Shown: one piece after another, positions 1-28,127 of the stretch
How the letters are laid out: each line of letters opens with the position of its first letter
Numbering within the stretch: position 1 is the stretch's first letter
Assembly (NCBI GenBank): GCA_002269645.1
Contig: NIVC01002748.1
Location: 16,418 to 80,417 of the forward strand
Reading direction: 5' to 3'
Origin: Macrostomum lignano
Lineage: Eukaryota
DNA length: 64,000 nt
Notes under the pieces: generated by a model
The model's database searches: none
Seen by the model: only the letters and a program-made list of their open reading frames with translations
Told to the model about the DNA's origin: nothing
Program-made: the position numbers and the translations under genes

Positions 1-368
1 GCACTGAAGTAGCACGGAGGGTATTGCTGCAGGGGCACTGAAGTAGCTCAGAGGGTATTGCTGCAGGGGCACTGAAGTATCACGGAGGGTATTGCTGCAG
101 GGGCACTGAAGTATCACGGAAAGTATTGCTGCAGGGGCACTGAAGTATCACGGAAAGTATTGCTGCAGGGGCACTGAAGTATCACGGAAAGTATTGCTGC
201 AGGGGCACTGAAGTATCACGGAAAGTATTGCTGCAGGGGCACTGAAGTATCACGGAAAGTATTGCTGCAGGGGCACTGAAGTATCACGGAGGGTAGCAGC
301 AGGGGCACTGAAGTAGCACGGAGGGTAGCAGCAGGGGCACTGAAGTATCACGGAGGGTAGCAGCAGGA
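1..368. repeat. 34-bp minisatellite (31-bp variants)
   Basis: Unit GCACTGAAGTATCACGGAAAGTATTGCTGCAGGG, about 11 copies; intronic in the FERM gene. Confidence 0.95.
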
Positions 369-449: not shown

Positions 450-3400
450 AGAACGAGTGGAAGCTGGAGTTCATGGTGAAGTTCTACCCGCCCGACCCGG
501 AGAATCTGCGGGAGAATCTCACCCGCTACTACATGGCGCTGCAGATTCGGCAGAACCTCATGGCCGAGCTGCTGCCTTGCAGTTTCATCACCTACATCAT
601 CCTGGGCAGCTACGTGCTGCAGTCTGAAGTTGGCGATTTCGATCCGTTGGACGAGAAGATGAACTCGCTGATGTACTTGAATGTAAGTCTGTAAGCGCAG
701 AGCTGACGATGAGAAAGTCAGGGCTCGCTTGATTGACTTTTTATCGAATTGCTACAGCTCATGTAGTACCTCGACATGTCAATAAACAAAGGCTCAATAA
801 GGATCTAGAACAGGGGTCAGGTAGAGAACATAGCGGATGACTGCGGGACAGAGATTTGAGAGAAGACAGCTGAGAAGAGACACAAACCCTGGGCAGACCG
901 GATTGCTATCGTGAAGTTTCCGAGGACCCAATGGCCGGATAGAGAGGCTTCGCCAACCCCTGATCTAGAATATCCCCATTTATCCGGTATTATCCCTCTC
1001 AAGATGGAAAGAGTTGGCAATTGATTTTCCTAGTTTAAACTTCGCCGCCCAGGACTGCCCGTTCTGTCCGGAGGAGTACCGAAACAACGCCGAGCTGGCC
1101 GAGCGAGTCAGCGAGCTGCACCGCACGCACCAGCGCATGACTCCGGAGGAGGCCGACCTGCACTTCCTGCGGAACGCCAAGAAGCTCGCCATGTACGGCG
1201 TCGATTTGCACGAGTCTAAGGACGCCTCTGGCGAGGAGGTCCTCCTTGGAGTTTACCACGGCGGCGTTCTGGTGTACCGCAACAACCTCCGGATTAACCG
1301 CTTCTCCTGGCCGAAGATTCTCAAAGTGTCCTACAAGGGCAGCACGCTCAAGGTGTCGATTCGCACCGGGGATAACGAGCGCGACCCCAAGTCGGAGACT
1401 CTGTTTGAGTTCAAGTGCGCCTCATCGAAGCTGGCTAAGCGACTCTGGCGGGCTGTGGTTGAGCATCACGGATTCTTCAGGTTAGCTTATTGTGCTCATG
1501 AACACAAGTTCCTACTAGTCTATTTATATCACTCTTTTTTAGAAACAATTCAATTATTGATTTAATCTTCTAATAGTATTTTTGTTTTCGAGTTGAAAAC
1601 GCATTTAACCTACTTATAGTAAGCAAGTAGCAAATAATGTTAGCAAAATTGAATGATCTTCAGATTGAAGTCCGCCGAGAAACCGCAGAAGCCGCACATT
1701 CCCGGCACCTTCAAGGGCAAGTGGGGCACCGGCATCCGGGACTCGCAGAACGACCAGTCGGGCGCCTACCAGGAGGTGCAAGTTACCCCTGACATGCGCA
1801 AGAGCTTCAAGAAGAAGGGTACGCATTGCTGCTTTTGCCGATGTTCATATCTGTCGCATTTTCAGCTCCTACGCTGACCATCAAGCAAATACATGGTAAT
1901 CTTTCTGACAAGGCAGCTACTTTTAGAGTTGGATTGGCAGAGCATCAGAGCCGGGGTGTCAGAGAGCTAGAGTGTCAGAGAGCCAGGGTGCCAGGGAGCC
2001 AGGGTGTCAGGGAGCCAGGGTGTCAGAGAGCCAGGGTGTCAGAGAGCCAGGGTGTCAGGGAGCCAGGGTGTCAGAGCCAGGGTGTCAGAGCCAGGGTGCC
2101 AGGGAGCCAGGGTATCAAAGAGCCAGGGTGTCAGAGAGCCAGGGTGCCAGGGAGCCAGAGTGTCAGGGAGCCAGGGTGTCAGAGAGCCAGGGTGTCAGAG
2201 AGCCAGGGTGTCAGAGAGCCAGGGTGTCAGAGAGCCAGGGTGTCAGAGAGCCAGAGTGTCAGAGAGCCAGGGTGTCAGAGAGCCAGGGTGTCAGAGCCAG
2301 GGTGTCAGAGCCAGGGTGTCAGAGAGCCAGGGTGTCAGAGAGCCAGGGTGTCAGGGAGCCAGGGTGTCAGAGAGCCAGGGTGTCAGAAAGCTAGAGTGTC
2401 AGAGAGCCAGGGTGCCAGGGAGCCAGGGTATCAAAGAGCCAGGGTGTCAGAGCCAGGGTGTCAAAGAGCCAGGGTGTCAGAGCCAGGGTGTCAGAGCCAG
2501 GGTGTCAGAGCCAGGGTGTCAAAGAGCCAGGGTGTCAGAGCCAGGGTGTCAGAGAGCCAGGGTGTCAGAGAGCCAGGGTGTCAGAGCCAGGGTGTCAGAG
2601 CCAGGGTGTCAAAGAGCCAGGGTGTCAAAGAGCCAGGGTGTCAGAGCCAGGGTGTCAGAGCCAGGGTGTCAAAGAGCCAGGGTGTCAGAGCCAGGGTGTC
2701 AGAGCCAGGGTGTCAAAGAGCCAGGGTGTCAGAGCCAGGGTGTCAGAGAGCCAGGGTGTCAGAGAGCCAGGATGTCAGAGAGCCAGGGTGTCAGAGAGCC
2801 AGGGTGTCAGAGCCAGGGTGTCAGAGCCAGGGTGTCAGAGCCAGGGTGTCAGAGCCAGGGTGTCAAAGAGCCAGGGTGTCAGAGCCAGGGTGTCAGAGCC
2901 AGGGTGTCAGAGAGCCAGGGTGTCAGAGCCAGGGTGTCAGAGCCAGGGTGTCAGAGCCAGGGTGTCAAAGAGCCAGGGTGTCAGAGCCAGGGTGTCAGAG
3001 CCAGGGTGTCAGAGAGCCAGGGTGTCAGAGAGCCAGGGTGTCAGCCATCAGCACTATGCAAATAGTCTAATTCTAGTAACTAACAAGTAATTTCTAAATA
3101 GCATGTGTAACGTTAAAAGCATCGATTTAAAAAGTTCTTTACGTACTTTAAAAGCACTATTTATTAATTAACTTTGATCAGCAGGCCCAGTGAATCGCTG
3201 GCACATCCACACAATTGTACTATTATTATTGCAATGCACTTTTAATTTCACTGCAGGCGGCCCTACAAAAGCTAAAGTAGACGAAGGATTCGACGGTCTG
3301 TTGATAGTTTTTAATTTAAAAAACTTGTAGAATATATTTGTAATATATTTGGATATTGCTAACCAATGCCTAACTCTGGTACTTTAATGTTTTTTTCTGT

Positions 3401-6400
3401 CTAACACACTCGCAATGGCGGTGTGGCATAATATCAATTTGGGCAATACAATTCAAGCCAGTAGTGCGAACGTCTGGACTGTTTAGTCCAGATGCTCTGT
3501 TCAAAGGTCTATGATTCTAAAAAAAGGAGAAATAGAAGTACAAACTGGTCACTTTAATTGTCATTTAAATATTTGATGTGGCATGAATTTAACTGCTATA
3601 ATATTAAGATCTGCTTGCTTCAGTAGACGAATAAATTATTAATGCCCATTGAAATTTTTTACGATAGAAGCATACGAATATTCCACAGCCTGCTATTTGT
3701 GCGATGAATTCTTTGTAAGAAACGCTTGACTGCCGTGCTTATAATTTTCAGCTTAGGCGACTACGCTATTACAAATCCGATTGATGCACTTTTCAGCCTG
3801 TGATTCTCTGCAATATATCAAGCAGTTTAGTAAGGGAGGGGTCGATTGAGGTCACACAGTGCGGGACTGTGGAGAACAGGGGTCGATTGAGGTCACACAG
3901 TGCGGGACTGAGGAGAACAGGGGTCGATTGAGGTCACACAAATGCGGGACTGAGGAGAACAGGGATCGATTGAGGTCACACAAGTGCGGGACTGAGGAGA
4001 ACAGGGGTCGATTGAGGTCACACAAGTGCGGGACGCAAAGGGTTTAACTAAGGTCACGTAGTGCGGAATGGACCAAAAGAAAAACGAAAAGGTCAGCCAA
4101 GGTCAACTCGGTGCGAAATCTTTAAGAGAGAAAGGTCAATCAGTTCGGCGTTCGGATATCCGGGGACTAATGAATGAGCTTTAGTTTAACTGTCTCAAAC
4201 AGTTTCTATTAAAATTGTTAAAACAAAATCAAAACATTTTCAAATCATCATTCGCGCAGACGACGCCTACAACCGTGAGGCTCGAACGGGCGCCGGCGGC
4301 GCTGGCACCTCGGGCTTGACCAACGACGACACCTACGCGATGTCCAACCGACAGGGCGCCGGCATGGGCGCGCCGCTGCTGCCGCCGGTGAACCGACGAG
4401 AGCAGTACGACCGCCGGCCCGAGCTGGACGTTGACAGACCGATTCGCTGGCAGATGAATCCATCAGACGCCGACCCCTACCTGGCCGCTGGCATGGACCC
4501 CGTGCGCTGCGCCGGCGCCTGCCCGGCCGGGGTTCGCGACTGGCAGGGCTGCCGGGCGGACCGCGGCATCCGGGCCTCGGCTGGCGGCAAGTGGTACTAC
4601 GAGACCGCTGTGCGGGGAGACGGGCCCTCCGACCAGCCGGTGGAGGCGCGGGTCGGCTGGGCGGACGGCAACGCCGATCTCAACCTCGGACGGGTGAGAC
4701 GAGCAGCCAGGATGGGATGAGAGGAACCAATTAGGGGACTACAAGGGTGTGGAGGGATGTACTCGTAGATAGGAGCGGAGAGGTGTAGATAGGAGCGGGG
4801 AGGTGTAGATAGGAGCGGGGAGGTGTAGATAGGAGCGGGGAGGTGTAGATAGGAGCGGGGAGGTGTAGATAGGAGCGGGGAGGTGTAGATAGGAGCGGAG
4901 AGGTGTAGATAGGAGCGAGAGGAGAGGTGTAGAGAAGAGTGGATAATAGAAAATCAGCCAATGCCTTCCTCCCGCCCCCGCCCCCAGGACAACCACGGCT
5001 GCGGTTTTGGCACCGACCCGGCCGGCCGACACGCCCAGAAGATGCTAGATGGAGTCTCCGAGCAATACGGCGTCCAGCTGATGACTGGTGACATAGTCGG
5101 TGCCTACCTGGACCTCGACAACGGCACCGTCACCTACGCGGTCAACGGCAAAGAGCTAGGGCCCGCGCACCAGCTGCCAGCCGACTTCTTTACTCCGACA
5201 GGCACTGCTGGCGGTAACAGGAAGTCCCGTGGTGGCGACGGTCCCCCCGGCGGCCCGCAGGCTGTTTATCCGGCCGCCTGCCTTCGCGATGGCGCCGCAG
5301 CTGACTGGAACTTTGGCGACGATCCGTCCAGACCGCTCGCCTATCCGCCCGGCGGAGCCTGGCGTCCGGTGGGCCTGGCGCTCGCCAACCAGACTTCGGA
5401 AAATCCACGCAGCTGGCGGTTAAACCCGCACGACACCAGCGGGCCGGGCCTGCAACTGGGACCCGACCAGCTGTCCGCGCAGGGCCAGCTGGGCTTTGGT
5501 TGGCAGGGCGTTCGGGCCAACAAGGTGAGTACAGCTTCCTGTGATAATGTGTGCGCTTCTGTATCCTTTAGGAGTAGCGGCTGTCTGTGGAAGAATCCAT
5601 TGGAAGTAGCGGCTGTCTGTGGAAGAATCCATTGGAAGTAGCGGCTGTTTGTGGAAGAATCCATTGGAAGTAGCGGCTGTCTGTGGAAGAATCCATTGGA
5701 AGTAGCGGCTGTTTGTGGAAGAATCCATTGGAAGTAGCGGTTGCCTGTGGAAGAATCCATTGGAAGTAGCGGCTGTTTGTGGAAGAATCCATTGGAAGTA
5801 GCGGTTGCCTGTGGAAGAATCCATTGGAAGTAGCGGTTGCCTGTGGAAGAATCCATTGGAAGTAGTGGCTGCCTGTGGAAGAATCCATTGGAAGTAGCGG
5901 CTGCCTGTGGAAGAATCCATTGGAAGTAGCGGCTGCCTGTGGAAGAATCCATTGGAAGTAGCGGCTGCCTGTGGAAGAATCCATTGGAAGGAGCGGTTGC
6001 CTGTGGAAGAATCCATTGGAAGTAGCGGCTGTCTGTGGAAGAATCCATTGGAAGGAGCGGCTGCCTGTGGAAGAATCCATTGGAAGTAACGGCTGCCTGT
6101 GGAAGAATCCACTGGAAGTAGCGGCTGCCTGTGGAAGAATCCATTGGAAGTAGCGGCTGCCTGTGGAAGAATCCATTGGAAGTAGCGGCTGCCTGTGGAA
6201 GAATCCATTGGAAGTAGCGGCTGCCTAAGATTAAAAACCCAGGCAGTGCCTAAGGCACTTGGCCCAAAACAAGTTTATTTGTTTAAAATCAATTACGGGT
6301 TCGGCGTAGATAAGAAAGGAGGGGTGGAGTGCGGGACTGAGAAAGGGGGTAAAATTGAAGAGCCAATCAGAAAGCTGCGCAAGAGAGAGAGAACCAGATT

Positions 6401-9400
6401 GAACTAGACTAAGAGAGAACAGTAAACGAGTTGAATAGATGACTAAGAAAGTCGCTGCAACACCAACACTTCCAGGGCCTGAAAGGCAGCGAGGGCGGCC
6501 GGTTCTACTGGGAGGCGGAGCCCCTGGAGTCCGGCGGCCTCGGCCGTGTCGGCTGGACCACCGAGTCCGGCTTGCTGGACGTCGGGCGCGACGCCAACGG
6601 CTGGGGCTACGGCGCCGACCACGAAGGCTTCGGCCTGGCCGGCAACCAGGGCAAGAAGCTATTCGACGACGAGATCGAAGCCTACGGCGAGCCCTACGCC
6701 AAAGGCGACGTCATTGGCTGTTTTTTCGATTTCAACAATGGCGAACTGCAGTTCGCTAAGAACGGCCAGCCGTTCGGACCGGCCTACAGTCTGCAGCAGG
6801 ACATGCTCGAGCGCGAGTCCTTCTTCCCAACTGTTGCCATGCGAGACCAGACGTTGGACGTGAATCTTGGACAGCGGCCGTTCCGTTATCCACCTGGTCC
6901 GGACTGGACGCCTGTCTGCCTGGCGCCCGAGTCTTCCATCCAGCCGAGTAGCAGGGCCGGCATTATGGAGGTTCGGATGATGCAACATCATTTTCTTGCA
7001 TTCTCGCTCATAGCAGGGGCCGGCGTAGCTAGAGAGGGGCAGGGGACGGCACCCCCTCTTCTAATAGGCTGACAAAATCTGGGGCGCCCCCTTTACAGTA
7101 GCTGTGGCGCCACTGGTGCTGCTGGCGCGCCTGGTGCTGCTGGCGCCACTGGAGGTGCTGGCGCCCCTGGTGCTGCTGGCGCCACTGGTGCTTCTGGCGC
7201 CACTGGTGCTGCTGGCGCGCCTGGTGCTGCTGGCGCCACTGGAGGTGCTGGCGCCCCTGGTGCTGCTGGCGCTACTGGTGCTGCTGGCGCGCCTAGTGCT
7301 GCTGGCGCCACTGGTGCTCTGGTGCTAGCCTCATCGATGACACCCCCTCCCCAATGATTGCGCCCTAAAGATGCACCTCACAGAAGCGATCCAATGAAGA
7401 AAACGTGACTACGCCCGTAACTCGTATTAGAGCAGAAGCATAACATTGATCTCGCAAGCAGTTCAATATTAATTTGATTCAAGCTAGGGGACGAATTCAC
7501 AATTCACTCAATGGCATAACGATTTTCCAGCGCAAGCCAAAAAAACGAGGCTTCAAATACGCCGACCCGAACTCGATCCGGGACAGCCTCGCCAAACGGG
7601 TTTGGGGCGCGAATTGTTTTTTAGACTCCTTTCTAAATCTAAGCACAGAACTGCATGCTTAATAATTGTTGCACTTTCTTTTCGGTTGCTTTACTGTTTT
7701 TTACTCGGAGTACGTCTGGAATTATAGCTTATTGGCTTCAAGCTCGACATCGGTTTGCATTTTATCAAATATTTATCCTTGTCGCCGCCTTTTGTCCCCC
7801 TGCATGCCAATCGTTGCCTCTTATGCTAGCTTGTAATGAAACTATTTCCACATTTTTTCCACTAGTTGGTGCAAACATAGAAAAAACACAGTAACAGTAT
7901 ACATGCAAACAGGCACTGGTTAGCTCGTAAAGAAAATCAAGAAAGCTCAAAGAAAACTACTGAAAAAATGATTTAGTGATTGATTAATCGAACACGCACA
8001 CTGCTAACTAGTGGTGAACTAGCCTGATCCAACATCATTTCCCTACTCAAGTCTCGCTGAAACACCAACCCATCTTTATGTAAGGTAACTTCCTCACTTC
8101 CAAGGCTCGCTATGACACCCACCCCACTCCATTTCCTTACCCCTCGACTCGCTTTAACAAACACCTCACTCCCCCCAAGCCTCGCTGAGACACCCACCCC
8201 ACTCCATTTCCTTACCCCTCGACTCGCTTTAACAAACACCTCACTCCCCCAAGCCTCGCTGAGACACCCACCCCACTCCATTTCCTTACCCCTCGACTCG
8301 CTTTAACAAACACCTCACTCCGCCCAAGCCTCGCTGAGACACCCACCCCACTCCATTTCCTTACCCCTCGACTCGCTTTAACAAACACCGCACTCCGCCC
8401 AAGCCTCGCTGAGACACCCACCCCACTCCATTTCCTTACCCCTCGACTCGCTTTAACAAACACCGCACTCCGCCCAAGCCTCGCTGAGACACCCACCCCA
8501 CTCCATTTCCTTACCCCTCAAGACTGGCTATGACACACATGATTTCTTTAGCACTTCATTTCACGTATGCTTTTATGCTTTTCATTTTCTTTGTTTTCTT
8601 TGAACTGCACAATAATTTATCCAACTCTATTGTATTTTTAAAATATGCTGACTACTCACTCTTCTTGCTCAATTTTTCAACTATTGCGCAGGCCTCCAAC
8701 CTACCGGCGGTTGACCAGAAATACGACATGATCAGGGAGAACAAGCCCCAGATCCGAGCTCCCAGCCCCAAGCCAAGGGGCAACGCTGGCGGCCCAGAGG
8801 GTCAGTCGGTCACGGTTCTGGAGAGTCGCACCGAGGTCAGTTGCTTTGAATTTCCCTATTTAAATTCCATTTAGGAAAACTAAGGTTAGTTCTGAGTTAG
8901 CTATTCTGTTGTTCAACTATGATTGTCTTTATATTCACCGAAAGGACGTTGAAAAAGTTGAATCTCAGCGGCGGCAGCAACAAGCGGATGCGACTCGGAA
9001 GCAGCAGAATGAGGAGCTTAGTGTCACTACTGTAAATAGGCGATTGTGAATTTTGAAATCTTCTTTAAAAAAAACGTATAAAACAGAAAATTCTTATTAA
9101 TATTTATGTTTACACGAGTATGACATGCATGTTTTTGCATGCATTTGATATATGACCATAAACATAAACATAAACTTAAGTATGCCATTGCAACACGGAT
9201 ATAGATTACAGTTAACGAAATGGCAGTGTTAATCAATATTTTTAACTGAAAGAAATGGGCAGTTCTATCAATTCAGATATTCTCATCTGGTTTACAGCTA
9301 GATATTCTCATGCTGCCTTTGACCAAGCATTAAGTTTTTTACACCAGTGCATTATGCTGTAAACCAAATAGCAATATCCTTTTCTAAATGGAGATTCGAT

Positions 9401-10997
9401 AAAATGCATGTCACTGGTTTTGTAGTGGCGCATATGTTCCATATTATCTTACTCATTCTGTTTTTTTATCCATATTGGCTAGAAACCTGTCTATCGGTTC
9501 GTCCATGTTGACTAGATTAGCAATCCATTCTATTCCTGCACCCATGTATTGGCTAGATTAGCAATCCACTGCCATCCTATCGCAGAGCGAGCAAGTCGGC
9601 GAGCCCGAGGAGGAAATAGTGACGTACGTTGACGAGCACGGCAACACTGTCACGAAGAAGATTGTGCGCAGCAAGAAGACCCGCCAGGTGATCACCAGCA
9701 AGGTGATTGAGACGCGCGGCCCGGCAGTGCCGGAAGGCGACGCCGCCTCGTCTGAGCATTTGGAGAAGTCGGTGAGTGCAGTAAGATACTGTAAACGTGA
9801 GTGAGTCCGGTTAAGTGTTCAGGTGATAGAAGCCGCCTTCTAAACGGCGCAGGTGATAAGACCCATTTACCGAATGGCCCAGGTGATGATAAATGCCTTC
9901 AAATGGCCCAGGCGATAAGAGTCACCCATCAGGTGGCCCAGACCCCAGGTGACAAAGGAGCCTTGAAACTTGCTCGAAATTAAGCTTTTTAAATTGGCTT
10001 CAACTCATCGCAAATCTCCAATTCGGCAGATCAAGTCTGGCGCATCCAAGCTGACCCGCAAGGAGACTCGCACAGGCCGGCGCAATCCGGCCATCTACGA
10101 GGAGGGCGGCGAAGAGGACGATGTAAGATTTCATGCGCGGATACGTGGGGCAACCGTGTTCAACCCCTCCTTCACAAGCGGGTCAATCCAGGGCTTCAGG
10201 CTGTTCATTGTTGATTGAATAGCTTAACAGACTGACCTTAATAAATTTCTAGGTATCTTAAGAGTAGTACAAAATATTCTTTACTGTGTTCTTATCCTTT
10301 ATAACACCACAATACACCACGATTCGCTCCAAGACTAAAGATTCTTTATCTGTCTTGATTGTGGCTCGACGAGGGTGAGAAAAGTGGAGCGTCTCCGCAC
10401 GGCTAGTGGGTTGGAAAATGGAGTGAGGTGGGTATTGCAGCGCGGCTAGTGGGTTAAAAAATGGAGTGAGGTGGGTGTCGCAGCGCGGCTAGTAGGTGTA
10501 GGAAATGGAGTGAGGTGGGTGTCGCAGCGCGGCTAGTGGGTGTAGGAAATGGAGTGAGGTGGGTGTCGCGGCGCGGCTAGTGGGTTAGAAAATGGAGTGA
10601 GGGAGGCGTCGCTGCGCGGCAAAGCTTTTTATGTCTGCTAGACTGTTGTCTTTATTTAATCAAATCATTGCTGATTGGTAAGAATCCAAGGCAATATGAA
10701 TAGCTTTTGTATTGGTCTTTCTACGAGCTATGTCTAGAAGGGGACCTACATGAACTTAGTTAAATGACTATGAATGGTAGATTTTTTTAAAGGATTTGAG
10801 AAAGCTAATTTATTAGTTCCACTTCTATTGAAACTCATCCACTTTAACTCATTTTTTTCCAGATTCTAAACGACATTATCTTCGAGCAGACCGGCCTAAG
10901 CCGAAAAGACAAAATCATGGACGAGAATGTGAACGATTTCAGCATGTCCACCATCGATTCCAGGAAATCGCCTCCGAAGCATGAGAGCGAAATCTAG
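450..10997 (+). CDS. EPB41L: Band 4.1/coracle-like FERM protein with two tandem DDX1-type SPRY domains (5'-partial, multi-exon)
   Basis: Phase-compatible GT-AG exons: 450-682, 1053-1480, 1664-1818, 3257-3295, 4260-4693, 4988-5524, 6476-6970, 8692-8835, 8945-9031, 9586-9771, 10030-10122, 10863-10997 (TAG); about 987 aa visible. FERM motifs VKFYPPDP..L....[66 protein letters not shown] match the protein 4.1 subfamily. SPRY1 spans exons 4260-5524 and SPRY2 spans 5400-6970. The C-terminus ends ..HESEI*, loosely like the 4.1 ..HQETEI end. The small exons at 3257 and 8945 are less certain. Confidence 0.9.
1946..3044. repeat. 14/16-bp minisatellite
   Basis: (GA)GAGCCAGGGTGTCA units; FERM intron. 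Confidence 0.95.
3833..4033. repeat. 41-42-bp minisatellite
   Basis: GGGGTCGATTGAGGTCACACA(A)GTGCGGGACTGAGGAGAACA, about 5 copies. Confidence 0.9.
4763..4935. repeat. 20-bp minisatellite
   Basis: AGGTGTAGATAGGAGCGGGG, about 8 copies, in the intron that splits SPRY1. Confidence 0.9.
5572..6225. repeat. 32-bp minisatellite
   Basis: GTGGAAGAATCCATTGGAAGTAGCGGCTGCCT, about 20 copies, in the intron that splits SPRY2. Confidence 0.95.
7020..7416. mobile_element. Possible GC-rich MITE hosting an 18-bp minisatellite
   Basis: GGCGTAG at 7022 is the inverse of CTACGCC at about 7409-7415. Internal GGGGCGCCCC motifs. TIR match is short and no TSD was confirmed. Confidence 0.3.
7105..7325. repeat. 18-bp GC-rich minisatellite
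   Basis: GGCGCCACTGGTGCTGCT, about 12 copies. Confidence 0.9.
8112..8520. repeat. 75-bp minisatellite
   Basis: Contains GACACCCACCCCACTCCATTTCCTTACCC; about 5.5 copies; reverse-complement relative of the 10395 and 11281 arrays. Confidence 0.9.
10395..10620. repeat. 43-44-bp minisatellite (last FERM intron)
   Basis: AAATGGAGTGAGGTGGGTGTCGCAGCGCGGCTAGTGGGTGTAGG, about 5 copies. Confidence 0.9.
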
Positions 10998-11280: not shown

Positions 11281-11820
11281 CAAATGGAGTGAGGTAGGTG
11301 TCGCAACGCGGCTACTGGATAAGGAAATGGAGTGAGGTAGGTGTCGCAACGCGGCTACTGGATAAGGAAATGGAGTGAGGTGGGTGTCGCAGCGCGGCTA
11401 GTGGGTAAGGAAATGGAGTGAGGTGGGTGTCGCAGCGCGGCTAGTGGGTGTAGGAAAATGAGTGAGGTGGGTGTCGCAACGCGGCTACTGGATAAGGAAA
11501 TGGAGTGAGGTGGGTGTCGCAGCGCGGCTAGTGGGTGTAGGAAAAGGAGTGAGGTGGGTGTCGCAACGCGGCTACTGGATAAGGAAATGGAGTGAGGTGG
11601 GTGTCGCAGCGCGGCTAGTGGGTGTAGGAAAATGAGTGAGGTGGGTGTCGCAACGCGGCTACTGGATAAGGAAATGGAGTGAGGTGGGTGTCGCAGCGCG
11701 GCTAGTGGGTGTAGGAAATGGAGTGAGGTGGGTGTCGCAGCGCGGCTAGTGGGTGTAGGAAATGGAGTGAGGTGGGTGTCGCAGCGCGGCTAGTGGGTAA
11801 GGATATGGATTGAGGAGGGT
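11281..11820. repeat. 43-44-bp minisatellite (same family, downstream of the FERM stop)
   Basis: Same unit as 10395-10620, about 12 copies. Confidence 0.9.
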
Positions 11821-12824
11821 GTAACCATTTAATGACTGTTGTTCAACACTGTAAATTAGAAATATCATCGTCAAGCCCTTTTATCTAGTGTTTTATTCAT
11901 CAGCCAAACATTCTCTTCCCAAAGCGTGCCTCTGTTTCCCTATTGCCTTTTTAGTGCTAATTTTTTTAGAATTTTGGATAAAAGCCTTCGATGCACCTGC
12001 TTGTATCCATCAAGATTTTGTAAGAACATCCTGCCCGCTGAATATGAGCTAGAAAAGCTATTTTGCGTGCTTGGTTAGAAATTTTTGCCCAATATTTACT
12101 GCAGCCATTTTTGCATGCTTTTAAATTAATTGAAAACGGAACGGCCTTTTGTTGAATCGATTTAAGTTTTATTTCGACTGTATTTTTGTGATTGTTAAAA
12201 GTTAAAACAATTTTTATTATTATTTAACATTTCCATTACTGTACACTCATTACAAGGTGCTAAATTTATTCTAAAGGTGATTTTAAAGTCATATAAAACG
12301 AAAAGCTTATTTAAGTGATCTTCTAATTCGTCGCTATCGTTCTGATCTATGTAGTAATAATAAATGCTAAACATAGGCTGCCAGTAGTGTATGACGGCAC
12401 TATAAGCAGTGTGACTTTTTTAGTCATGCAGCCCGACCGCTGATCAATGCTGCTTGTAAATTGCTGCCTAATTTAACAGTTACTCTATTGATTCAATACA
12501 GACCCTCATATCATGGCGTTGAAAAAAGCTGAAATTCTTATAATTGTTTTAATTGCAAATTTCATCTTTGTGTCACTAGCCGCGATTTTTCTGAAAATGC
12601 CTGCTTACTGAGTGAGAAATACACTACTACTGCTACTATTAGTAACTGAGCGTGTATGCATACTGTATGTCTAAAGAATTAAGTTAAATAAATTACAACC
12701 GAAAAATAGCAGGCAATACACCCTATGCTTTTTTGCCTGGAGCTCAGCTTTGCTACCCGGTCGCGGGACTGCGCGCCTCCGTGCTGATGCAAATATAATT
12801 AACCCGGCCTCTGTTTTTCTTATT

Positions 12825-13800
<976 letters not shown>

Positions 13801-14283
13801 TTACTGCTTGTCTACGTAGTAATTTGAAGTTCAGCCAAATTCTACTACTCCTCTTTCTCTACTTAGCTTGTCTGTCTTCTACGCTCGTAATTGCAGGGAA
13901 ATTTCTAGAAGCTTTCAGTAGGATGTCGATTGGTTTTTAAAGCTGGTGAGGCTGTCAGATAGCCAAGGTAGTCCGGGAGTGAGACTGCTTTTCTCCCAAA
14001 GCTAACAAGTCAGTTCAAACAAGTCTTTTACATCGGTATTCGTCTTTTAACCCGTGGTCCCCATGATTTCAACTCGCGTTCTCACACCCGACAGCAATTT
14101 CCTGCTGTTCCGGTTGCCAGGAGCAACAACAGCTCAAAAATAGAGAAGATTGCAAAGTCAATAAGCAGGCAAATCAGCAGCAATGATCTTACACTAGTTT
14201 CATGGACGCAGCTATAAATGAAAGCCACCCTGAAAATCAAATACACCTCTGGCTTGCGCGGTAATTGTGACTCTGCATGCAAA

Positions 14284-17075
14284 ATGCTGGCCCTATTCTC
14301 TGCTCTGCTGCTCATCCACTGCATCTCTGGTAAGTTGAGAAGTCTTCATTTGTCATAAAAATAGCTAAAAAAGAACGATTGTAGAACGGCAACGCTTAGA
14401 ATACGCGCACTTGCGTGTTTCTGAACGAATTTCGCAAGGCTTTGCGTTTTGTGCGTTATGTGAATGTGGTTTGGCCATAGACAAGCTGAGTCGAGAAATC
14501 TATAAAATCCGTCTAGACAAAGACACACTACAGAGACGGGCTCAGCTAAAATCTCGTCACAACTTTGCTTGCTTATCAGTCTCAGGTAGCATTCGATGAA
14601 AAATAGCTTGATGAACTTTTATTGTCCATGGCACTTGGGGTGAACTGAAGAATGTGCAGAGTTACTTGGCTTGCTCAGTGACACAAATTGTTCTGAGTGA
14701 GTCGAGAATCGAACCCCCGACTGCATAGAATAATACCGGTGCATGTGCGCAACTGTGATATACCAATCCTGAAGCAGAAAATTAAAACAAAAAATTACCC
14801 GAAATTCGCCACTTTGAATTTTGAAATTTTATTGAAAACTAAAATTTGCTTCAACTACCTTTAGGAATTTCTCTGTTTCTTAAGAAAGGCATCGACTTTT
14901 TGTTCCTAAGCAGCATTGGTGGGCCTTTCCGTCGTTTCCACGCTTAACGACTTCGAATTCGCATATTTAAACTACGCTCACTTTTCCGCAGCCTCGGCCG
15001 ATTTCGAAGCTGTGCCGCAGACAACCTGCGCCTGCGTGGACTCCCGCTCTTCCATCACCGTCTCAAAGTCCGACTGCGTGTTGCAATGCCTGGCCAGTCC
15101 GACCTGCCGCTCGTTTCGATTCAACGACTCCACATCGGAGTGCGAGATGTCAACTAGCCGGGATGGCTGCTTCAACTACCTACCGGAGAATTCCACCTTG
15201 TACCGAAAATTTGGTAAAATTGTTTACACTTGTACATTTATACTTTGAACTCGTGAATGGCTGAAGCAGCAGGACGTCGAAATACAACTCCAAATAAATA
15301 GGTTTCTGTAGTCTATGGCCCGGGTCCAAGTGGGGAATAAATAGGTTTCTGTAGTCTATGGCCCGAGTCCCAGTGGGGAATAAATAGGTTTCTGTAGTCT
15401 ATGGCCCGGGTCCCAGTGGGGAATAAATAGGTTTCTGTAGTCTATGGACGGGCCCGAATAAATAGGTTTCTGTAGTCTATGGCCGGGTCCAAGTGGGGAA
15501 TAAATAGGTTTCTGTAGTCTATGGCCGGGTCCAAGTGGGGAATAAATAGGTTTCTGTAGTCTATGGCCGGGTCCAAGTGGGGAATAAATAGGTTTCTGTA
15601 GTCTATGGCCGGGTCCAAGTGGGGAATAAATAGGTTTCTGTAGTCTATGGCCCGGGTCCCAGTGGGGAATAAATAGGTTTCTGTAGTCTATGGCCGGGCC
15701 CAAATGTTCCTTGGAAAAGTGCGCAAATTTCTCCGAAAAACACTAGCAGACGGCCAAATGAATTTAGTGCCACTCACTATTGAAGCGGGTCATCCGTGTG
15801 CTTTATTCTGTTTCCATCTATGATTTAAAAATCTATTTTCTCAGGATCCGAGCCCACGAATTCGACCAAGTGCTTGGTGCAGAAACGCTATAATAGCGCC
15901 GTGAGCTTCGAGCGAAGCTGGTCTGACTACGTCAATGGATTCGGCGACAAAACGAATTTCTGGCTAGGTGAGAGTTGTCACGAGGAATTGCTCTTCTCTT
16001 CTTATTGCCTCGAGATTTGAAATTGTCTGTATAGATTTTCAAAGTATTTGTAGTTACATCGCAAGCAATGTAAGAAGCTTCATCACAGACCAATGAACCA
16101 CATTTATTGCGTCCAACAGCATGCTTTAACTGCCTTAAATGGATAAATTTGGATGTTGGGTACCGGTTATCAGGTATCGGGTATTGGGCATCGGGAATCG
16201 GGTACAGGGAATCGGGTACAGGGTATCCGGTACAGGGTATCGGATACAGGGTATCGGCCGGGTATCAAGTATCGAGTAAAAAGTATTGGGTATCGGGTTT
16301 TTGGTATCGGGTGTTGGGTATCGCCGGTATCGGGTTTTAGGTATCGGGTGTTGGGTATTGGGTATTGAGTATCGAATAAAGGGTATTGGGTATCGGGTTT
16401 TAGGTATCGGGTATCGAGTACAGTGTATCGGGTATCGGGTACAGAGTATTGGGTATCGGGTACCGCGTTTTAGGTATCGGGTATCGGGTATCGGGTATCG
16501 AGTGCAGGGTATCGGGTATCGGGTATCGGGTATCGGGTATCGAGTGCAGGGTATCGGGTATCGGGTATCGGGTATCGGGTATCGGGTATCGGGTATCGGG
16601 TACTCAGTAGCAGCAATTCAGCATGGCCGATCGCCGCACCGCAGGGCTGGACAGACTCCATCTGCTGACAAGTGGAAATGTGAGCGTGACGATGTCCGTT
16701 CAGAGCGGTATTGACGGAAAATATTACAAATGCAAGTACCTCGACTTCACCGTGAAGGGCCCAACTGAAGGGTACGCCATGAACTACTCCAAGTACCAAA
16801 AGGGCTCCGTCAATTTCGGAGACTCAATGCTGGCCAGCCGAGGTGCCGAGTTCGCCACCTTCGATTTTCCAGTGGGCTCGCCAGGCCAGGCCTGCTCGCA
16901 GGCTTACGGCAACAGCGGCTGGTGGTTCGGCACCGGAGACAACTGCAGCGAGGCCAATCCCAATGGCATTTTCGATCGTAATGGCGATATTGGCGACATC
17001 CAGTACATGGGCTGGTTCGGCGCCACGGGCCAGTGGGAGCCGCTGCAAATGTCCCAGATCTATCTACACTTTTAA
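14284..17075 (+). CDS. Secreted PAN/apple + fibrinogen-related domain (FReD) protein, about 299 aa
   Basis: Exons 14284-14329 (signal peptide MLALFSALLLIHCIS), 14914-15213 (PAN-like CVLQCLASPTCRSFRFN..SECEMS), 15845-15967 (VQKRYNSAVSFERSWSDYVNGFG...NFWLG), 16645-17075 (GLDRLHLLT ... GWWF...CSEANPNG). Total 900 nt, all phases compatible. Confidence 0.9.
14640..14760 (-). mobile_element. Possible relic of a different tRNA-SINE
   Basis: GAGAATCGAACC at 14704-14715 reads as a B box (GGTTCGATTCTC) on the minus strand, inside intron 1 of the FReD gene. No second copy in the window. Confidence 0.3.
15295..15702. repeat. 42-43-bp minisatellite
   Basis: ATAAATAGGTTTCTGTAGTCTATGGCCGGGTCCAAGTGGGGA; FReD intron 2. 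Confidence 0.93.
16155..16600. repeat. 7-bp G-rich repeat (GGGTATC)n
   Basis: FReD intron 3; degenerate at the 5' end and purer at the 3' end. Confidence 0.93.
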
Positions 17076-18455: not shown

Positions 18456-25077
<6,622 letters not shown>

Positions 25078-25324
25078 CTGACTAGCTGACTAGCTGACTA
25101 GATGCTTAGCGCCGCGCTCGAACGGAATGAAAACTCGAACTCAGCTTAGCGAACTGAGCTGCCGTAGCTCCGTTGGACCCCAGGGACCATAGACACAGAA
25201 GTTTCTAAAAATAGAGCTTTTGCAAGTAACTACTTCTCTGAAGTAGCAATCAGCGCACACCCCCTTCGAGAAGCCAACAAAGAATGGAATAATTTTTTTG
25301 AATAAACTACATGTAGCTTCTGAC

Positions 25325-26385
25325 GTCAGCCTTGGCATCTCAGCAACTCTCTCATCAGCCTTGGCATCTCAGCAACTCTCTCATCAGCCTTGGCATCTCA
25401 GCAACTCTCTCATCAGCCTTGGCATCTCAGCAACTCCCTCATCAGCCTTGGCATCTCAGCAACTCTCTCATCAGCCTTGGCATCTCAGCAACTCTCTCAT
25501 CAGCCTTGGCATCTCAGCAACTCTCTCATCAGCCTTGGCATCTCAGCAACTCTCTCATCAGCCTTGGCATCTCAGCAACTCCCTCATCAGCCTTGGCATC
25601 TCAGCAACTCTCTCATCAGCCTTGGCATCTCAGCAACTCTCTCATCAGCCTTGGCATCTCAGCAACTCTCTCATCAGCCTTGGCATCTCAGCAACTCTCT
25701 CATCAGCCTTGGCATCTCAGCAACTCCCTCTCATCAGCCTTGGCATCTCAGCAACTCTCTCTCATCAGCCTTGGCATCTCAGCAACTCCCTCTCATCAGC
25801 CTTGGCATCTCAGCAACTCTCTCTCATCAGCCTTGGCATCTCAGCAACTCCCTCATCAGCCTTGGCATCTCAGCAACTCTCTCATCAGCCTTGGCATCTC
25901 AGCAACTCTCTCTCATCAGCCTTGGCATCTCAGCAACTCCCTCATCAGCCTTGGAATCTCAGCAACTCCCTCATCAGCCTTGGCATCTCAGCAACTCCCT
26001 CATCAGCCTTGGCATCTCAGCAACTCTCTCATCAGCCTTGGCATCTCAGCAACTCCCTCATCAGCCTTGGCATCTCAGCAACTCTCTCTCATCTGCCTTG
26101 GCATCTCAGCAACTCCCTCATCAGCCTTGGAATCTCAGCAACTCCCTCATCAGCCTTGGCATCTCAGCAACTCCCTCATCAGCCTTGGCATCTCAGCAAC
26201 TCTCTCATCAGCCTTGGCATCTCAGCAACTCCCTCATCAGCCTTGGCATCTCAGCAACTCTCTCTCATCTGCCTTGGCATCTCAGCAATTCCCTCATCAG
26301 CCTTGGCATCTCAGCAATTCCCTCATCAGCCTTGGCATCTCAGCAATTCCCTCATAAGCCTTGGCATCTCAGCAACTCCCCCTGC
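25325..26385. repeat. 29/31-bp minisatellite
   Basis: CAGCCTTGGCATCTCAGCAACTCTCTCAT, about 36 copies. Confidence 0.95.
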
Positions 26386-26391
26386 AAGCAA

Positions 26392-26660
26392 TTCCGCCCA
26401 TTCCGCTGACTCGTGAGCGCAAAGAAGCCCGCCAATACTGTACACATGGACTTGACACACACGCTCACACAGGGTGTACAGCGGCCCTGACTTCCTAATC
26501 ATCCGGTATGTACACTCTCTGTGACTTTGGGGTTGATCCTCATGGGCGGTGAATCGCAAGACATCCCCCAGGGGCCAACTTTCGTGCACACACAGCCCCG
26601 AATGAGTGCTGCCGCTCACGGAATCGAACCAGGGGTCTTGGCGCGGTAGTTTTCCGCTCT
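26392..26660 (-). mobile_element. tRNA-derived SINE, second diverged copy
   Basis: Shares GCCCATTCCGCYGACTC, CTCACACAGGRTGTACAGCGGCCCTRACTT, GGYATGTACACT and CTTTGGGGTTG with the 20441 copy. B box GGTTCGATTCC on the minus strand near 26620-26630. Confidence 0.65.
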
Positions 26661-28127
26661 GCAATTTTTGGTTTCCGCAAATAAATAAGTGCGATTTACT
26701 CCTGAATACTACTAGTTGTAAGTAGCTCAAATGCATACAGTCCGATTCGTTCCTGCCCTGTCAATCAAGCTGCAGTATCATCATCAAGTGCCAGATGACA
26801 GTGCCAGCTTCTGCAGCAACCACTCACCGATGCGGATGCGCCCTGCCGGAATTGGTAATCAGATCAGAGCGCACGCGAATAAACAAACCTGCCGCCGACA
26901 CATTGATAATTCCGCGCGCTGCACGCATCGAAAGTGCTGCTGACAGAAAGACAACGGAAAGGAATGCCCGGAATGCGGATGGAAGCAGCTTCTGCTTCTT
27001 TCTTCTTTGCTTGTTGCAGAAATTCTTTTGCGGAATTCCTTTACGCTCGCAGTTCGGGTCGAAGCGAGAGAGAACGAGTCCCACCCCAAAGCTCTTTAGT
27101 GTCCTTTTTCTGTCCTCCCACATCCGCCACTCTGTATAGCCAGACAAATCGCCGTTACTGCGGAAAATATGTTTTTTCGCCTGTTTTTTTGCCCGCCACC
27201 AGCCCGCTCTCTACAGCCTGTTGACGGCTTCAATGATCGATGCCGCCCTCTCTGCCGGGAGAGGTCGCCAACATTGCAGATTGAAGTGATCTGGACTGTG
27301 CTGTCCTGCCGGCCCTCCTAAACAGAAACCAAGCACTCTAGCGTGCCTGGAATGCGGGGCGGGGGTTGGGGCGCATCGGGTTTGACCCTCGCTGACTTCG
27401 GCCTGAGGTCAGGACCTTGGCTGGCATGCCTTTTCGCCGAATTTTTTTTAGGCGAGAATTTGGCAATAGGGAAATGCAAGACGGAAATCCGAAAGAGGGG
27501 GAGGGAGAAGTGGCGCTTCACTGATGCCGAACACACGCGCACCTCGCCGGGATTCCTGGGGCCAGGCTGGCCTTGTTAATCCGGCCATCCCAATGGACAC
27601 CTGATCGCGCGGCTACCTCAAGCAAAAACAACACTTTCAGCGGCTGAGGCGTTTAAATTGCCACCCATCGAGGCCCGCGAAGGAGTGGGCGGCGGAGGTG
27701 GGAGGTGGGAGGAGGTGGGCCTGGCCTGGATAGCTCGTACTCTCCGCTTGTTGCTTCCCTCTTGCTTGCTAATCTTGTGGATGTGCAGGATTTGTTTTTG
27801 ACAAACTGGCTTATTTTGAGTGCTGCAGGAGCGACCCAGCGCTCGCTTGCTTTTAAAAAATTCAGCAGGTATTCGTTCGATGGAGTAAAGTTCCTTGTTA
27901 AGAACAAAATTTATTCCCCATTTCCGAAGCGAATATTCACTCAATTCCAGTGGGACTTGGCTGAAAAATATTATTGCCGTTCGGTCTGCCTCGGAGTCCC
28001 GCTTGATGAGCTGCAACTTGCTTCCGAAAATTCTACCCCACTGGGCGCTTCATCCTTCTTAACTGCTACTTGATTATTTCAGTAAATTCTAGGGATTTAG
28101 TTTGTACTTTCACTTAATAGTGTTACT

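What the first reader, a model, noticed from the sequence alone, without database searches (positions are those of the whole stretch)
450..10997. Band 4.1-type FERM adaptor carrying two tandem DDX1-like SPRY domains
Seen in sequence: twelve GT-AG exons join in one frame from a protein 4.1-subfamily FERM domain through two SPRY domains to a 4.1-like acidic tail. SPRY1 reads [67 protein letters not shown]2 reads [55 protein letters not shown]. Established: the DDX1 helicase SPRY insert begins WQMNPYD..EWHGCRATKG..HYYE..CRVGW, which these match better than generic B30.2 domains. Canonical 4.1/coracle proteins have FERM-FA-(spectrin/actin-binding)-CTD and no SPRY. Inference: a DDX1-derived SPRY was captured and duplicated, giving a membrane-cortex scaffold with two new protein-docking surfaces, possibly linking junction or cytoskeleton sites to RNP partners. 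I do not know whether this architecture is already annotated in flatworms.
Basis: partly seen in the sequence, partly recalled or inferred. Interest (0 to 1): 0.75.

Follow-up and report, generated by a model that had tools for sequence, protein, structure and literature searches.

The report
Flatworm protein 4.1 with two SPRY domains
This is a real, intact Macrostomum lignano gene for a protein 4.1-type membrane-skeleton adaptor carrying two DDX1-like SPRY domains; the layout is conserved across flatworms and already sits, unstudied and sometimes misnamed, in public databases.

Summary
Window 450-10997 (+) carries the 3' five-sixths of one GT-AG spliced gene. Its product is 99.6% identical to the annotated Macrostomum lignano protein BOX15_Mlig026758g1, a "hypothetical protein". 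The protein has a 4.1-subfamily FERM domain (E 8e-72 to EPB41L3) and a weak FA-like remnant. Two adjacent SPRY domains follow, then a tail with a weak 4.1 CTD-like remnant.

For both SPRYs the best solved relative is the human DDX1 SPRY, by sequence (85 and 106 bits; next family 46) and by fold (TM 0.91-0.93).

Uninterrupted 3.5-4 kb transcript contigs from two flatworm lineages join the FERM and SPRY parts. Three intron positions are shared with Taenia. So this is one gene, not a fusion artefact.

FERM+SPRY proteins turned up in flatworms only: Macrostomum, flukes, monogeneans and tapeworms. Several are mislabelled "DDX1".

- that the SPRY came from DDX1 itself and was then duplicated (tree support is weak; SPRY1, SPRY2 and DDX1 are about equidistant);
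- any link to RNP partners (the DDX1 SPRY has no known partner);
- that the architecture is new to databases.

It is a conserved, unstudied variant of protein 4.1, of moderate interest.

The parts
450..682 (+). Exon: FERM central (alpha) lobe. It is the first exon inside the window; the gene continues upstream of base 1.
   Evidence: AG|exon|GT boundaries. Pfam FERM_M covers aa 15-130, i.e. 494-1211. The tblastn junction of transcript protein P0002 ends at 679-682.
1053..1480 (+). Exon: end of the FERM alpha lobe and most of the FERM C (PH-like) lobe. It holds [17 protein letters not shown] and most of [17 protein letters not shown], which spans the 1480/1664 junction. Both peptides are near-identical to the aligned 4.1R segments.
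   Evidence: The phase-2 intron after HHGFF is shared with Taenia crassiceps.
1664..1818 (+). Exon: end of FERM_C and a degenerate FERM-adjacent (FA)-like segment ([20 protein letters not shown]...).
   Evidence: hhalign of the flatworm post-FERM profile against the canonical 4.1 post-FERM profile gives probability 56%, E 1.1e-4. Pfam FA is not detected.
3257..3295 (+). 39-nt mini-exon ([13 protein letters not shown]).
   Evidence: It has an AG/GT frame, is present in P0001 and in transcript protein P0002, and is 100% identical in L003.
4260..4693 (+). Exon: low-complexity linker and the N-terminal half of SPRY1. SPRY1 as a whole is 4439-4693 plus 4988-5383.
   Evidence: The PDB search with SPRY1 gives DDX1 SPRY at 85 bits, E 6.8e-23.
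4988..5524 (+). Exon: C-terminal half of SPRY1, a 7-residue junction, and the start of SPRY2 (from 5405).
   Evidence: The Gly-rich loop [20 protein letters not shown] is specific to Macrostomum and is modelled with low confidence.
6476..6970 (+). Exon: the rest of SPRY2 (to 6928).
   Evidence: The PDB search with SPRY2 gives DDX1 SPRY at 105.7 bits, E 2.6e-29. The phase-0 intron RANK|GLKG before this exon matches Taenia RANR|GVKG in position and phase.
7531..7599 (+). Probable cassette exon ([23 protein letters not shown]), 69 nt.
   Evidence: AG/GT and in frame. It is absent from P0001 and P0002. Homologous peptides sit at the same place in P0003 (RKSKGFTYVDPRMLQESLTKR), P0004 and P0006. It differs from L003 at 1 of 73 bases.
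8692..8835 (+). Exon: tail ([18 protein letters not shown]...).
8945..9031 (+). Doubtful 87-nt cassette exon ([29 protein letters not shown]).
   Evidence: It is in frame with AG/GT in both genome copies. No homologue or transcript contains it, and it has 3 mismatches in 91 bases, an intron-like rate.
9586..9771 (+). Exon: conserved tail motif A ([38 protein letters not shown]; 9607-9720).
   Evidence: The motif is conserved in all flatworm orthologues. It resembles the 4.1 CTD segment TYKTEKDGVVETRIERK by eye only.
10030..10122 (+). Exon: basic/acidic tail segment ending in EEGGEEDD.
   Evidence: It is 100% identical in L003.
10863..10997 (+). Last exon: tail motif B ([13 protein letters not shown]...NDFSMSTID) and the TAG stop at 10995-10997.
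   Evidence: A CTD HMM matches the homologous place in the fluke, tapeworm and monogenean orthologues. hhalign gives E 1.4e-4, probability 53%.

Best explanation
SHOWN. Window 450-10997 is the 3' part of an expressed, selectively constrained Macrostomum lignano gene. It is a second haplotype or homeologue copy of BOX15_Mlig026758g1. It encodes a protein of about 1100 aa with this layout: a 4.1-subfamily FERM domain, a degenerate FA-like stretch, a disordered linker, two directly abutting DDX1-type SPRY beta-sandwiches, and a tail with two conserved motifs, the second resembling the core helix of the 4.1 C-terminal domain. The same layout is conserved in flukes, monogeneans and tapeworms, with shared intron positions. 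It was therefore present in the common ancestor of Macrostomum and the parasitic flatworms.

INFERRED MECHANISM. This is a flatworm version of protein 4.1/coracle and works as a membrane-cortex adaptor.
- The FERM domain docks on cytoplasmic tails of membrane proteins, on MAGUKs and on phosphoinositides, most likely at basolateral or septate-junction membranes.
- The two segments that I recall, from the literature and not checked here, as the calmodulin-binding peptides of 4.1R are almost unchanged.
- The SPRY pair sits where vertebrate 4.1 carries its spectrin-actin-binding domain.
- It is predicted to form one fairly rigid two-lobed module and serves as a protein-docking platform for partners that are still unknown.
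- SPRY2 is as conserved as the FERM domain, so it probably makes the key contact.
- One probable and one doubtful cassette exon, on the C-terminal side of the SPRY module, may tune the tail.

Origin: the SPRY module is of the DDX1 type. It was probably acquired once and duplicated in tandem before the flatworm radiation, but neither the order of events nor the donor gene is resolved.
For: Gene model and identity:
- The exons join in frame.
- The product differs at 4 of 958 residues from P0001.
- The window is collinear with NIVC01001965.1 at 95-98% identity.

Constraint: the exons in the annotated model are 99.5% identical between the two copies (14 differences in 2879 nt), against 95-97% for the surrounding DNA. 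Ten codon differences are synonymous and 4 are non-synonymous.

One mRNA:
- L001 and L002, from two sequencing runs, are 3.5-kb contigs with an uninterrupted 1088-aa FERM+SPRY ORF.
- Their tblastn junctions coincide with my exon ends.
- L004 is a 3975-nt contig with an uninterrupted 1105-aa ORF from the Dicrocoelium cluster.

Orthology: FERM+SPRY proteins occur in Calicophoron, Mesocestoides, Taenia, Dicrocoelium, Echinostoma, Clonorchis, Cichlidogyrus, Schistocephalus and Rodentolepis. Intron positions and phases are shared between M. lignano and T. crassiceps in the FERM N-lobe, at the end of FERM_C and in SPRY2.

4.1 identity:
- EPB41L3 scores 245 bits and 4.1R 242 bits, against 146 for FARP and 118 for PTPN3.
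- All non-flatworm top hits are canonical 4.1 with FA and CTD.
- FA-like remnant: hhalign E 1.1e-4.
- CTD-like remnant: 11.3 and 7.8 bits, against at most 7.3 and 1.9 in 200 shuffles, at the same HMM positions in five orthologues; hhalign E 1.4e-4.

DDX1-type SPRY:
- PDB sequence search.
- The exhaustive search ranks DEAD-box DDX1 proteins immediately after the flatworm orthologues; 24 of the 50 top hits scanned carry DEAD.
- The AlphaFold model has pLDDT 84.8 and pTM 0.78, and its best Foldseek match is 4xw3 with TM 0.91-0.93 and rmsd 1.4-1.6 A.
- The N-terminal motif W-x-[MLIV]-[NS]-x-D is in 41 of 43 flatworm SPRYs, 12 of 73 DDX1 and 2 of 62 others.

Conservation between Macrostomum and the parasites: SPRY2 41-56%, FERM 43-50%, SPRY1 33-39%.
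Against: - No expression, localisation or interaction data exist for this protein in any flatworm. No paper was found.
- Pfam's curated FA, SAB and 4_1_CTD models detect nothing in any flatworm orthologue, even at E up to 10. My first profile comparison of the tail was negative, at probability 0.5%.
- I could not test whether flatworms also keep a canonical 4.1 without SPRY, so calling this 'the' flatworm 4.1 is unproven.
- The function of the donor-type SPRY in DDX1 is itself unknown, so partner identity cannot be inferred.
- The full-length AlphaFold model is poor (pLDDT 58) and says nothing reliable about contacts between FERM, SPRY and tail.
- Single capture followed by duplication has only 36% bootstrap support.
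Confidence: 0.72

Rival explanations
1. The SPRY pair does not descend from the DDX1 gene. It comes from another DDX1-like SPRY lineage, or the two SPRYs were acquired separately, and the resemblance to DDX1 only reflects a shared slow-evolving SPRY subtype.
For: In the NJ tree the flatworm clade is sister to a mixed DDX1-rich clade that includes protist DDX1s, not nested among animal DDX1s. The best DDX1 matches come from nematodes, red and green algae and a pelagophyte alike. Profile scores are SPRY1-SPRY2 354, SPRY1-DDX1 354 and SPRY2-DDX1 374. Bootstrap support is weak. Multi-SPRY proteins of unknown origin, such as P0161, score nearly as well.
Against: DDX1 is by a wide margin the best solved relative of both domains (85 and 106 bits, against 46 or less) and the best fold match. 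No SAP/AAA-type (hnRNP U) architecture was among the 50 top hits scanned. The best tree does unite SPRY1 and SPRY2.
Confidence: 0.3
2. FERM and SPRY parts are two neighbouring genes fused by gene prediction or by the reader's exon joining.
For: The two parts are separated by 2.4 kb of repeat-rich intron (1819-4259, interrupted only by the 39-nt exon 3257-3295). Several database entries hold only the SPRY half (P0121-P0125).
Against: Uninterrupted ORFs span both halves on short transcript-like contigs from three sequencing runs and two lineages. Their junctions match my exon ends exactly. The reading frame is continuous with no stop. The same order is found in ten or more species. The SPRY-only entries lie on short contigs or are fragments.
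Confidence: 0.03
3. The window copy is a decaying duplicate (pseudogene) of the annotated gene.
For: M. lignano carries many duplicated regions. The window differs from NIVC01001965.1 by 3-5% in introns.
Against: There is no frameshift or stop. All splice sites are intact in both copies. The exons are about ten times less diverged than the introns, with 10 synonymous against 4 non-synonymous codon changes.
Confidence: 0.03

Closest known systems
Protein 4.1 family (EPB41, EPB41L1-3; Drosophila coracle)
   Same: The FERM domain is 49-56% identical to canonical invertebrate and vertebrate 4.1 and scores 242-245 bits to the 4.1R and 4.1B structures. The order is FERM, then a post-FERM segment, then a variable centre, then a conserved C-terminal motif. 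The segments aligned to 4.1R AKKLSMYGVDLHKAKDL and AKKLWKVCVEHHTFFR are nearly unchanged.
   Different: Two SPRY domains occupy the centre, and none of the canonical 4.1 proteins listed has SPRY. FA and CTD have degenerated below Pfam detection. No SAB domain is present.
SPRY insertion domain of the DEAD-box helicase DDX1 (PDB 4xw3; Kellner & Meinhart 2015, PMC4555926)
   Same: It is the best sequence and fold match for both SPRYs, at 32% identity, TM 0.91-0.93 and rmsd about 1.5 A. Both share the N-terminal strand motif W-x-M/L-N-P-x-D and the core motifs W-x-G-x-R-A, Y-Y-E, R-V-G-W, D-V-I-G-C and F-P.
   Different: It is not inserted in a RecA domain, and there are no helicase motifs at all. 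It is present as a tandem pair. SPRY2 has a 10-residue insertion (aligned to a gap in DDX1) after the G-Y-G motif, and Macrostomum SPRY1 has a Gly-rich loop.
Other FERM proteins that carry an added effector module (MYLIP/IDOL FERM-RING, FARP FERM-RhoGEF, PTPN3/4 FERM-PDZ-phosphatase)
   Same: The general principle is the same: a FERM membrane anchor fused to a second functional module. All of these appear as weaker FERM hits.
   Different: The FERM here belongs to the 4.1 branch proper, not to those branches (245 bits against 118-147). The added module is a non-catalytic SPRY pair.
Multi-SPRY proteins such as ryanodine receptors
   Same: Several SPRY domains lie in one chain, and these are the second-best PDB family.
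   Different: The sequence scores are much lower (35-46 bits). Superposition over both domains gives rmsd 18-20 A, so the arrangement of the two domains is different.

Membership tests
Protein 4.1 family | FERM domain of the 4.1 subtype (closer to EPB41/EPB41L than to ERM, FARP, PTPN or MYLIP) | tested here: met
   EPB41L3 scores 245 bits, 4.1R 242, FARP 142-147, PTPN3 118 and merlin/ERM about 70. All non-flatworm top hits are canonical 4.1. The N-lobe is outside the window but present in P0001.
Protein 4.1 family | FERM-adjacent (FA) region directly after the FERM domain (Pfam PF08736) | tested here: inconclusive
   Pfam gives no hit, even at E up to 10. A profile-profile comparison of the 65 residues after FERM gives probability 56% and E 1.1e-4, aligning flatworm PGF-x-x-RKY-x-Y with canonical FGSKFRYSGRT.
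Protein 4.1 family | Spectrin-actin-binding domain (Pfam PF04382) | tested here: not met
   It is absent from the window protein and from all flatworm orthologues. In one search it is listed only for fish 4.1 proteins, the only vertebrates among the hits, so its absence does not exclude 4.1 membership for an invertebrate.
Protein 4.1 family | C-terminal domain (Pfam PF05902) | tested here: inconclusive
   Pfam finds none, phmmer finds none, and the first hhalign gave probability 0.5%. A CTD HMM built from 109 canonical proteins hits the same 21-28 residues at the C-terminus of five parasite orthologues (11.3 and 7.8 bits, above all 200 shuffles). hhalign with a 9-sequence tail profile gives E 1.4e-4 and probability 53%. 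The Macrostomum tail on its own is not significant.
SPRY domain (Pfam PF00622) | Match above the curated threshold, and a beta-sandwich fold | tested here: met
   106.9 bits against a cut-off of 26.3, in two stretches. Two full-length domains were found at model residues 345-561 and 569-759. AlphaFold gives pLDDT 84.8 with all-beta domains.
DDX1-type SPRY subfamily | Closest sequence and structural relative is the DDX1 SPRY | tested here: met
DDX1-type SPRY subfamily | Forms a supported clade with DDX1 SPRY domains in a phylogeny | tested here: inconclusive
   In the best NJ tree the flatworm clade is sister to a DDX1-rich clade. The flatworm clade is recovered in 36% of bootstraps. Of those trees, 76% have a DDX1-majority sister.
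DDX1 helicase (the name some databases give the orthologues) | DEAD/RecA1, Helicase_C/RecA2 and the C-terminal helix that recruits DDX1 to the tRNA ligase complex | tested here: not met
   There is no DEAD or Helicase_C domain in the window protein or in any FERM+SPRY orthologue. The 'DDX1' labels on the Clonorchis, S. japonicum and Cichlidogyrus entries are misannotations driven by the SPRY match.

The most novel reading that the evidence does not exclude
The FERM-SPRY-SPRY protein is the only protein 4.1/coracle orthologue that flatworms have. If so, a tandem DDX1-type SPRY module was built into the core membrane-skeleton and septate-junction adaptor in the flatworm stem lineage and has been kept ever since. 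Cortex or junction organisation in flatworms, including the tegument-bearing parasites, would then depend on a SPRY-mediated contact that their vertebrate hosts lack.
Probability: 0.25. Interest if true: 0.6.

Novelty: new variant of a known kind. Interest (0 to 1): 0.36.

Why it matters
Protein 4.1 and coracle are core organisers of the membrane skeleton and of septate and paranodal junctions. Their variable central region is where lineage-specific functions sit, such as spectrin-actin binding in vertebrates.

A phylum-wide replacement of that region by a conserved SPRY pair would give flatworms a different set of cortical partners. It would also offer a clean natural experiment on what a DDX1-type SPRY can bind, which is still unknown even for DDX1.

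Practically, several parasite genome annotations call fragments of this gene 'DDX1 helicase'. That is wrong and should be corrected.

None of this changes a general principle, because domain shuffling onto FERM scaffolds is common. The gene models are already public.

Tried and rejected
1. A direct phmmer search of the tail against 114 canonical 4.1 proteins found nothing below E 0.4. A first hhalign of a 5-sequence tail alignment against the CTD gave probability 0.5%. Only a CTD HMM tested on parasite orthologues, and a richer 9-sequence alignment, gave weak positive signals.

2. The NJ bootstrap phylogeny of 128 SPRY domains was too weak to fix the order of events. Group profile scores were about equidistant.

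3. Intron-position comparison with DDX1 genes was uninformative. The wasp DDX1 SPRY lies in one exon, the mite model could not be mapped, and the green-alga introns lie elsewhere. One alga intron is 2 nt away from a Taenia SPRY2 intron, which I do not count as shared.

4. Word-indexed homologue searches with the SPRY pair, as a single sequence and as a profile, missed the full-length orthologues and returned mainly fragments. The exhaustive search was needed.

5. Full-length AlphaFold gave pLDDT 58 and pTM 0.44, so no inference on inter-domain contacts or tail fold is possible.

6. Genomic loci for the Dicrocoelium and Calicophoron proteins were not on record.

7. Five literature searches for FERM+SPRY, protein 4.1 or coracle in flatworms found no relevant paper.

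8. Rfam and tRNA scans of the window found nothing.

9. I rejected the fused-gene artefact and the pseudogene readings; see the rival explanations.

Full report
**What is in the sequence.**
The + strand of window 450-10997 holds GC-rich exons (52-73% G+C) separated by introns, nearly all of which carry minisatellites. Joining GT-AG exons in one frame gives an open reading frame that ends at the TAG at 10995-10997.

Comparison with homologues corrected the model. A 39-nt exon at 3257-3295 belongs to it. The 87-nt exon at 8945-9031 is in no homologue. The eleven supported exons encode 958 aa. These differ at only four residues from residues 141-1098 of P0001, the GenBank protein BOX15_Mlig026758g1 of Macrostomum lignano.

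The window is collinear with that gene's scaffold, NIVC01001965.1, at 95-98% identity. It is therefore another haplotype, homeologue or assembly copy of an already annotated gene. The exons for the first 140 residues, which include the FERM N-lobe, lie upstream of the window.

**Is it one gene, and is it alive?**
P0002 is 78% identical and comes from two independent sequencing runs. It is encoded as an uninterrupted 1088-codon ORF on 3.5-kb contigs with short flanks. The M. lignano gene spans 18 kb and the Taenia gene 31.5 kb, so these contigs must be spliced transcripts. When P0002 is laid on the window, its alignment blocks end at my exon ends. A second contig of this kind, 3975 nt with 1105 codons, belongs to the Dicrocoelium cluster.

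Between the two M. lignano copies the exons in the annotated model differ at 14 of 2879 bases, with 10 synonymous and 4 non-synonymous codon changes. The surrounding DNA differs by 3-5%. All splice sites are intact.

M. lignano and Taenia crassiceps share intron positions and phases in the FERM N-lobe, at the end of FERM_C and inside SPRY2 (RANK|GLKG against RANR|GVKG, both phase 0). A fused-gene artefact and a pseudogene are both excluded for practical purposes.

**Domains.**
Pfam finds FERM_M, FERM_C and two SPRY stretches.

The FERM part scores 245 bits to EPB41L3 and 242 to 4.1R. That compares with 142-147 for FARP, 118 for PTPN3 and about 70 for merlin and ERM proteins. Every non-flatworm protein among the 120 best hits is a canonical 4.1 with FA and usually CTD, and none has SPRY. 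The segments aligned to 4.1R AKKLSMYGVDLHKAKDL and AKKLWKVCVEHHTFFR read [17 protein letters not shown] and [16 protein letters not shown]. I recall these as the calmodulin-binding peptides of 4.1R. That is from memory of the literature and was not tested here.

The two SPRY domains (model residues 345-561 and 569-759) are separated by only seven residues. Searched separately against all solved structures, each has the human DDX1 SPRY (4xw3) as its best match:
- SPRY1 scores 85 bits; the next family is a ryanodine receptor at 46.
- SPRY2 scores 106 bits; the next family is RanBP10 at 39.

An AlphaFold model of the pair, built on eleven flatworm sequences, has pLDDT 84.8 and pTM 0.78. Only two lineage-specific loops have low confidence. 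Its best Foldseek match in the PDB is again 4xw3, with TM 0.91-0.93, rmsd 1.4-1.6 A and 32% identity. Ryanodine receptors align over both domains only at rmsd 18-20 A.

**Remnants of the other 4.1 modules.**
Pfam's FA, SAB and CTD models find nothing in the window protein or in six orthologues, even at E up to 10. Targeted tests give weak positive signals.
- The 65 residues after the FERM domain, taken as a flatworm profile, align to the canonical FA start with probability 56% and E 1.1e-4.
- A CTD HMM built from 109 canonical proteins hits the same 21-28 positions (..D-x-D-x-a-L-A-x-A-I-x-e-x-t-x-l-n-P-d..V) near the C-terminus of five fluke, tapeworm and monogenean orthologues.
- Two of those CTD hits lie above all 200 shuffled controls.
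- A nine-sequence tail profile aligns to the CTD profile with E 1.4e-4 and probability 53%.
- The Macrostomum tail alone is not significant, and an earlier, poorer alignment was negative.

I read this as degenerate FA and CTD. It is likely but not proven.

**Distribution.**
An exhaustive HMMER scan of 1.84 billion cluster representatives with the SPRY pair returned 2276 hits. Among the best 150, every protein that also has a FERM domain is from a flatworm. These are:
- Macrostomum, with two paralogue groups (P0001 and P0003, 58% identical);
- the flukes Dicrocoelium, Clonorchis, Echinostoma and Calicophoron;
- the monogenean Cichlidogyrus;
- the tapeworms Schistocephalus, Mesocestoides, Taenia and Rodentolepis.

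SPRY-pair fragments also exist for Schistosoma japonicum, S. curassoni, Heterobilharzia, Paragonimus, Protopolystoma and Dibothriocephalus.

Directly below these come DDX1 helicases from nematodes, algae and other eukaryotes. Several flatworm entries are named 'ATP-dependent RNA helicase DDX1' although they contain no helicase domain. That is a misannotation. I found no planarian sequence, and I do not know whether that reflects true absence or database content.

**Origin of the SPRY pair.**
In an NJ tree of 128 SPRY domains, SPRY1 and SPRY2 of all flatworms form one clade, with SPRY2 monophyletic. That clade sits beside a DDX1-rich clade. Support is weak, however:
- the flatworm clade appears in 36% of 200 bootstraps;
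- SPRY2 is monophyletic in 58%;
- among trees that recover the flatworm clade, 76% have a DDX1-majority sister.

Profile-profile scores are 354 for SPRY1-SPRY2, 354 for SPRY1-DDX1 and 374 for SPRY2-DDX1, against 283-300 to the remaining SPRYs. The N-terminal motif W-x-[MLIV]-[NS]-x-D is in 41 of 43 flatworm SPRYs, 12 of 73 DDX1 SPRYs and 2 of 62 others.

So 'DDX1-type' is well supported. 'Copied from DDX1 once and then duplicated' is the simplest story but is not demonstrated. Intron comparison with three DDX1 genes did not help.

**How it probably works.**
What is shown is the anatomy and its conservation. Between Macrostomum and the parasites, SPRY2 is 41-56% identical and is as conserved as the FERM domain (43-50%). 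SPRY1 is 33-39% identical, and the linkers are hardly alignable.

From what is established for 4.1 proteins, I infer that the FERM domain anchors the protein to membrane-protein tails, MAGUKs and lipids. I also infer that the rigid SPRY pair is a docking platform placed where vertebrate 4.1 binds spectrin and actin.

The partner cannot be guessed from DDX1. Its SPRY has a conserved basic patch proposed as an interaction surface (PMC4555926). But its function is stated to be unknown, and it is dispensable for recruiting DDX1 to the tRNA ligase complex (PMC8668186, PMC13586351).

The exon 7531-7599 encodes a basic K-K-R-G-F-K-Y-x-D-P peptide that is conserved from Macrostomum to tapeworms but skipped in two models. 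It is a good candidate for a regulated cassette next to the SPRY module.

**Verdict.**
The gene is an ordinary, intact, already annotated but uncharacterised flatworm gene. Its architecture is a lineage-specific variant of protein 4.1 that I could not find described in the literature. It deserves a note and a corrected annotation rather than a headline.

Noticed in passing
window 1-359, 1947-3044, 3837-4034, 4765-4917, 5573-6226, 7101-7322, 8100-8519, 10400-10620, 11282-11822: Most introns of the gene, and its 3' flank, hold a minisatellite with units of 16-75 nt and up to 72 copies. The 43-44-nt family at 10400-10620 (intron) recurs at 11282-11822 (3' flank). The array at 8100-8519 contains the reverse complement of its GGAAATGGAGTGGGGTGGGTGTC core.
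   Followed up: partly
window 1-22300 against L003 (NIVC01001965.1): The window is a second copy of an assembled M. lignano region, at 95-98% identity with repeat-array length differences. Exons are about ten-fold better conserved than introns. This fits a haplotype or homeologue pair in this duplicated genome.
   Followed up: partly
public entries P0122 (S. japonicum), P0143 (Clonorchis GAA30691.2), P0145 (Cichlidogyrus KAL3319268.1): Orthologues or fragments of this FERM-SPRY gene are named 'ATP-dependent RNA helicase DDX1' or 'DEAD box helicase 1' although they have no helicase domain. The names appear to come from the SPRY match.
   Followed up: yes
window 14916-15248 (+) and 16623-17075 (+): ORF pieces with a PAN_1 domain (E 2e-8) and a Fibrinogen_C domain (E 6e-12). 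They are probably exons of one secreted fibrinogen-related protein gene downstream of the 4.1-SPRY gene.
   Followed up: partly
window 35282-36709 (-): An uninterrupted 475-codon ORF for a rhodopsin-family GPCR (7tm_1, E 4e-18) with a long, Gly/Ala-rich third intracellular loop.
   Followed up: partly
window 49197-52286 (-): Exons of a gene that looks like RNA exonuclease 1 (REXO1). An EloA-BP1 domain lies at 50195-51088 (E 3e-20), and 49197-49670 looks by eye like an exonuclease-type exon, though Pfam found no domain there. An acidic/Ser-rich ORF lies at 51339-52286.
   Followed up: partly
window 61641-62342 (-): An exon encoding part of a LIM domain and a homeodomain (E 2e-18), i.e. a LIM-homeobox transcription factor gene at the window's end.
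   Followed up: partly
P0126 (M. lignano A0A1I8FE87, 544 aa): A further M. lignano protein, labelled 'SH2 domain-containing', aligns to 81-87% of the SPRY pair at 31% identity but has no Pfam hit at E up to 0.01. It may be a divergent SPRY-pair paralogue without FERM.
   Followed up: partly
window 12750-13940, 18824-20551, 25298-26416, 28097-29013, 33323-34561, 38765-41343, 58421-61286: Long 'ORFs' in several frames are translations of satellite arrays. They are not genes, and they account for the strong local GC and AT skews.
   Followed up: no
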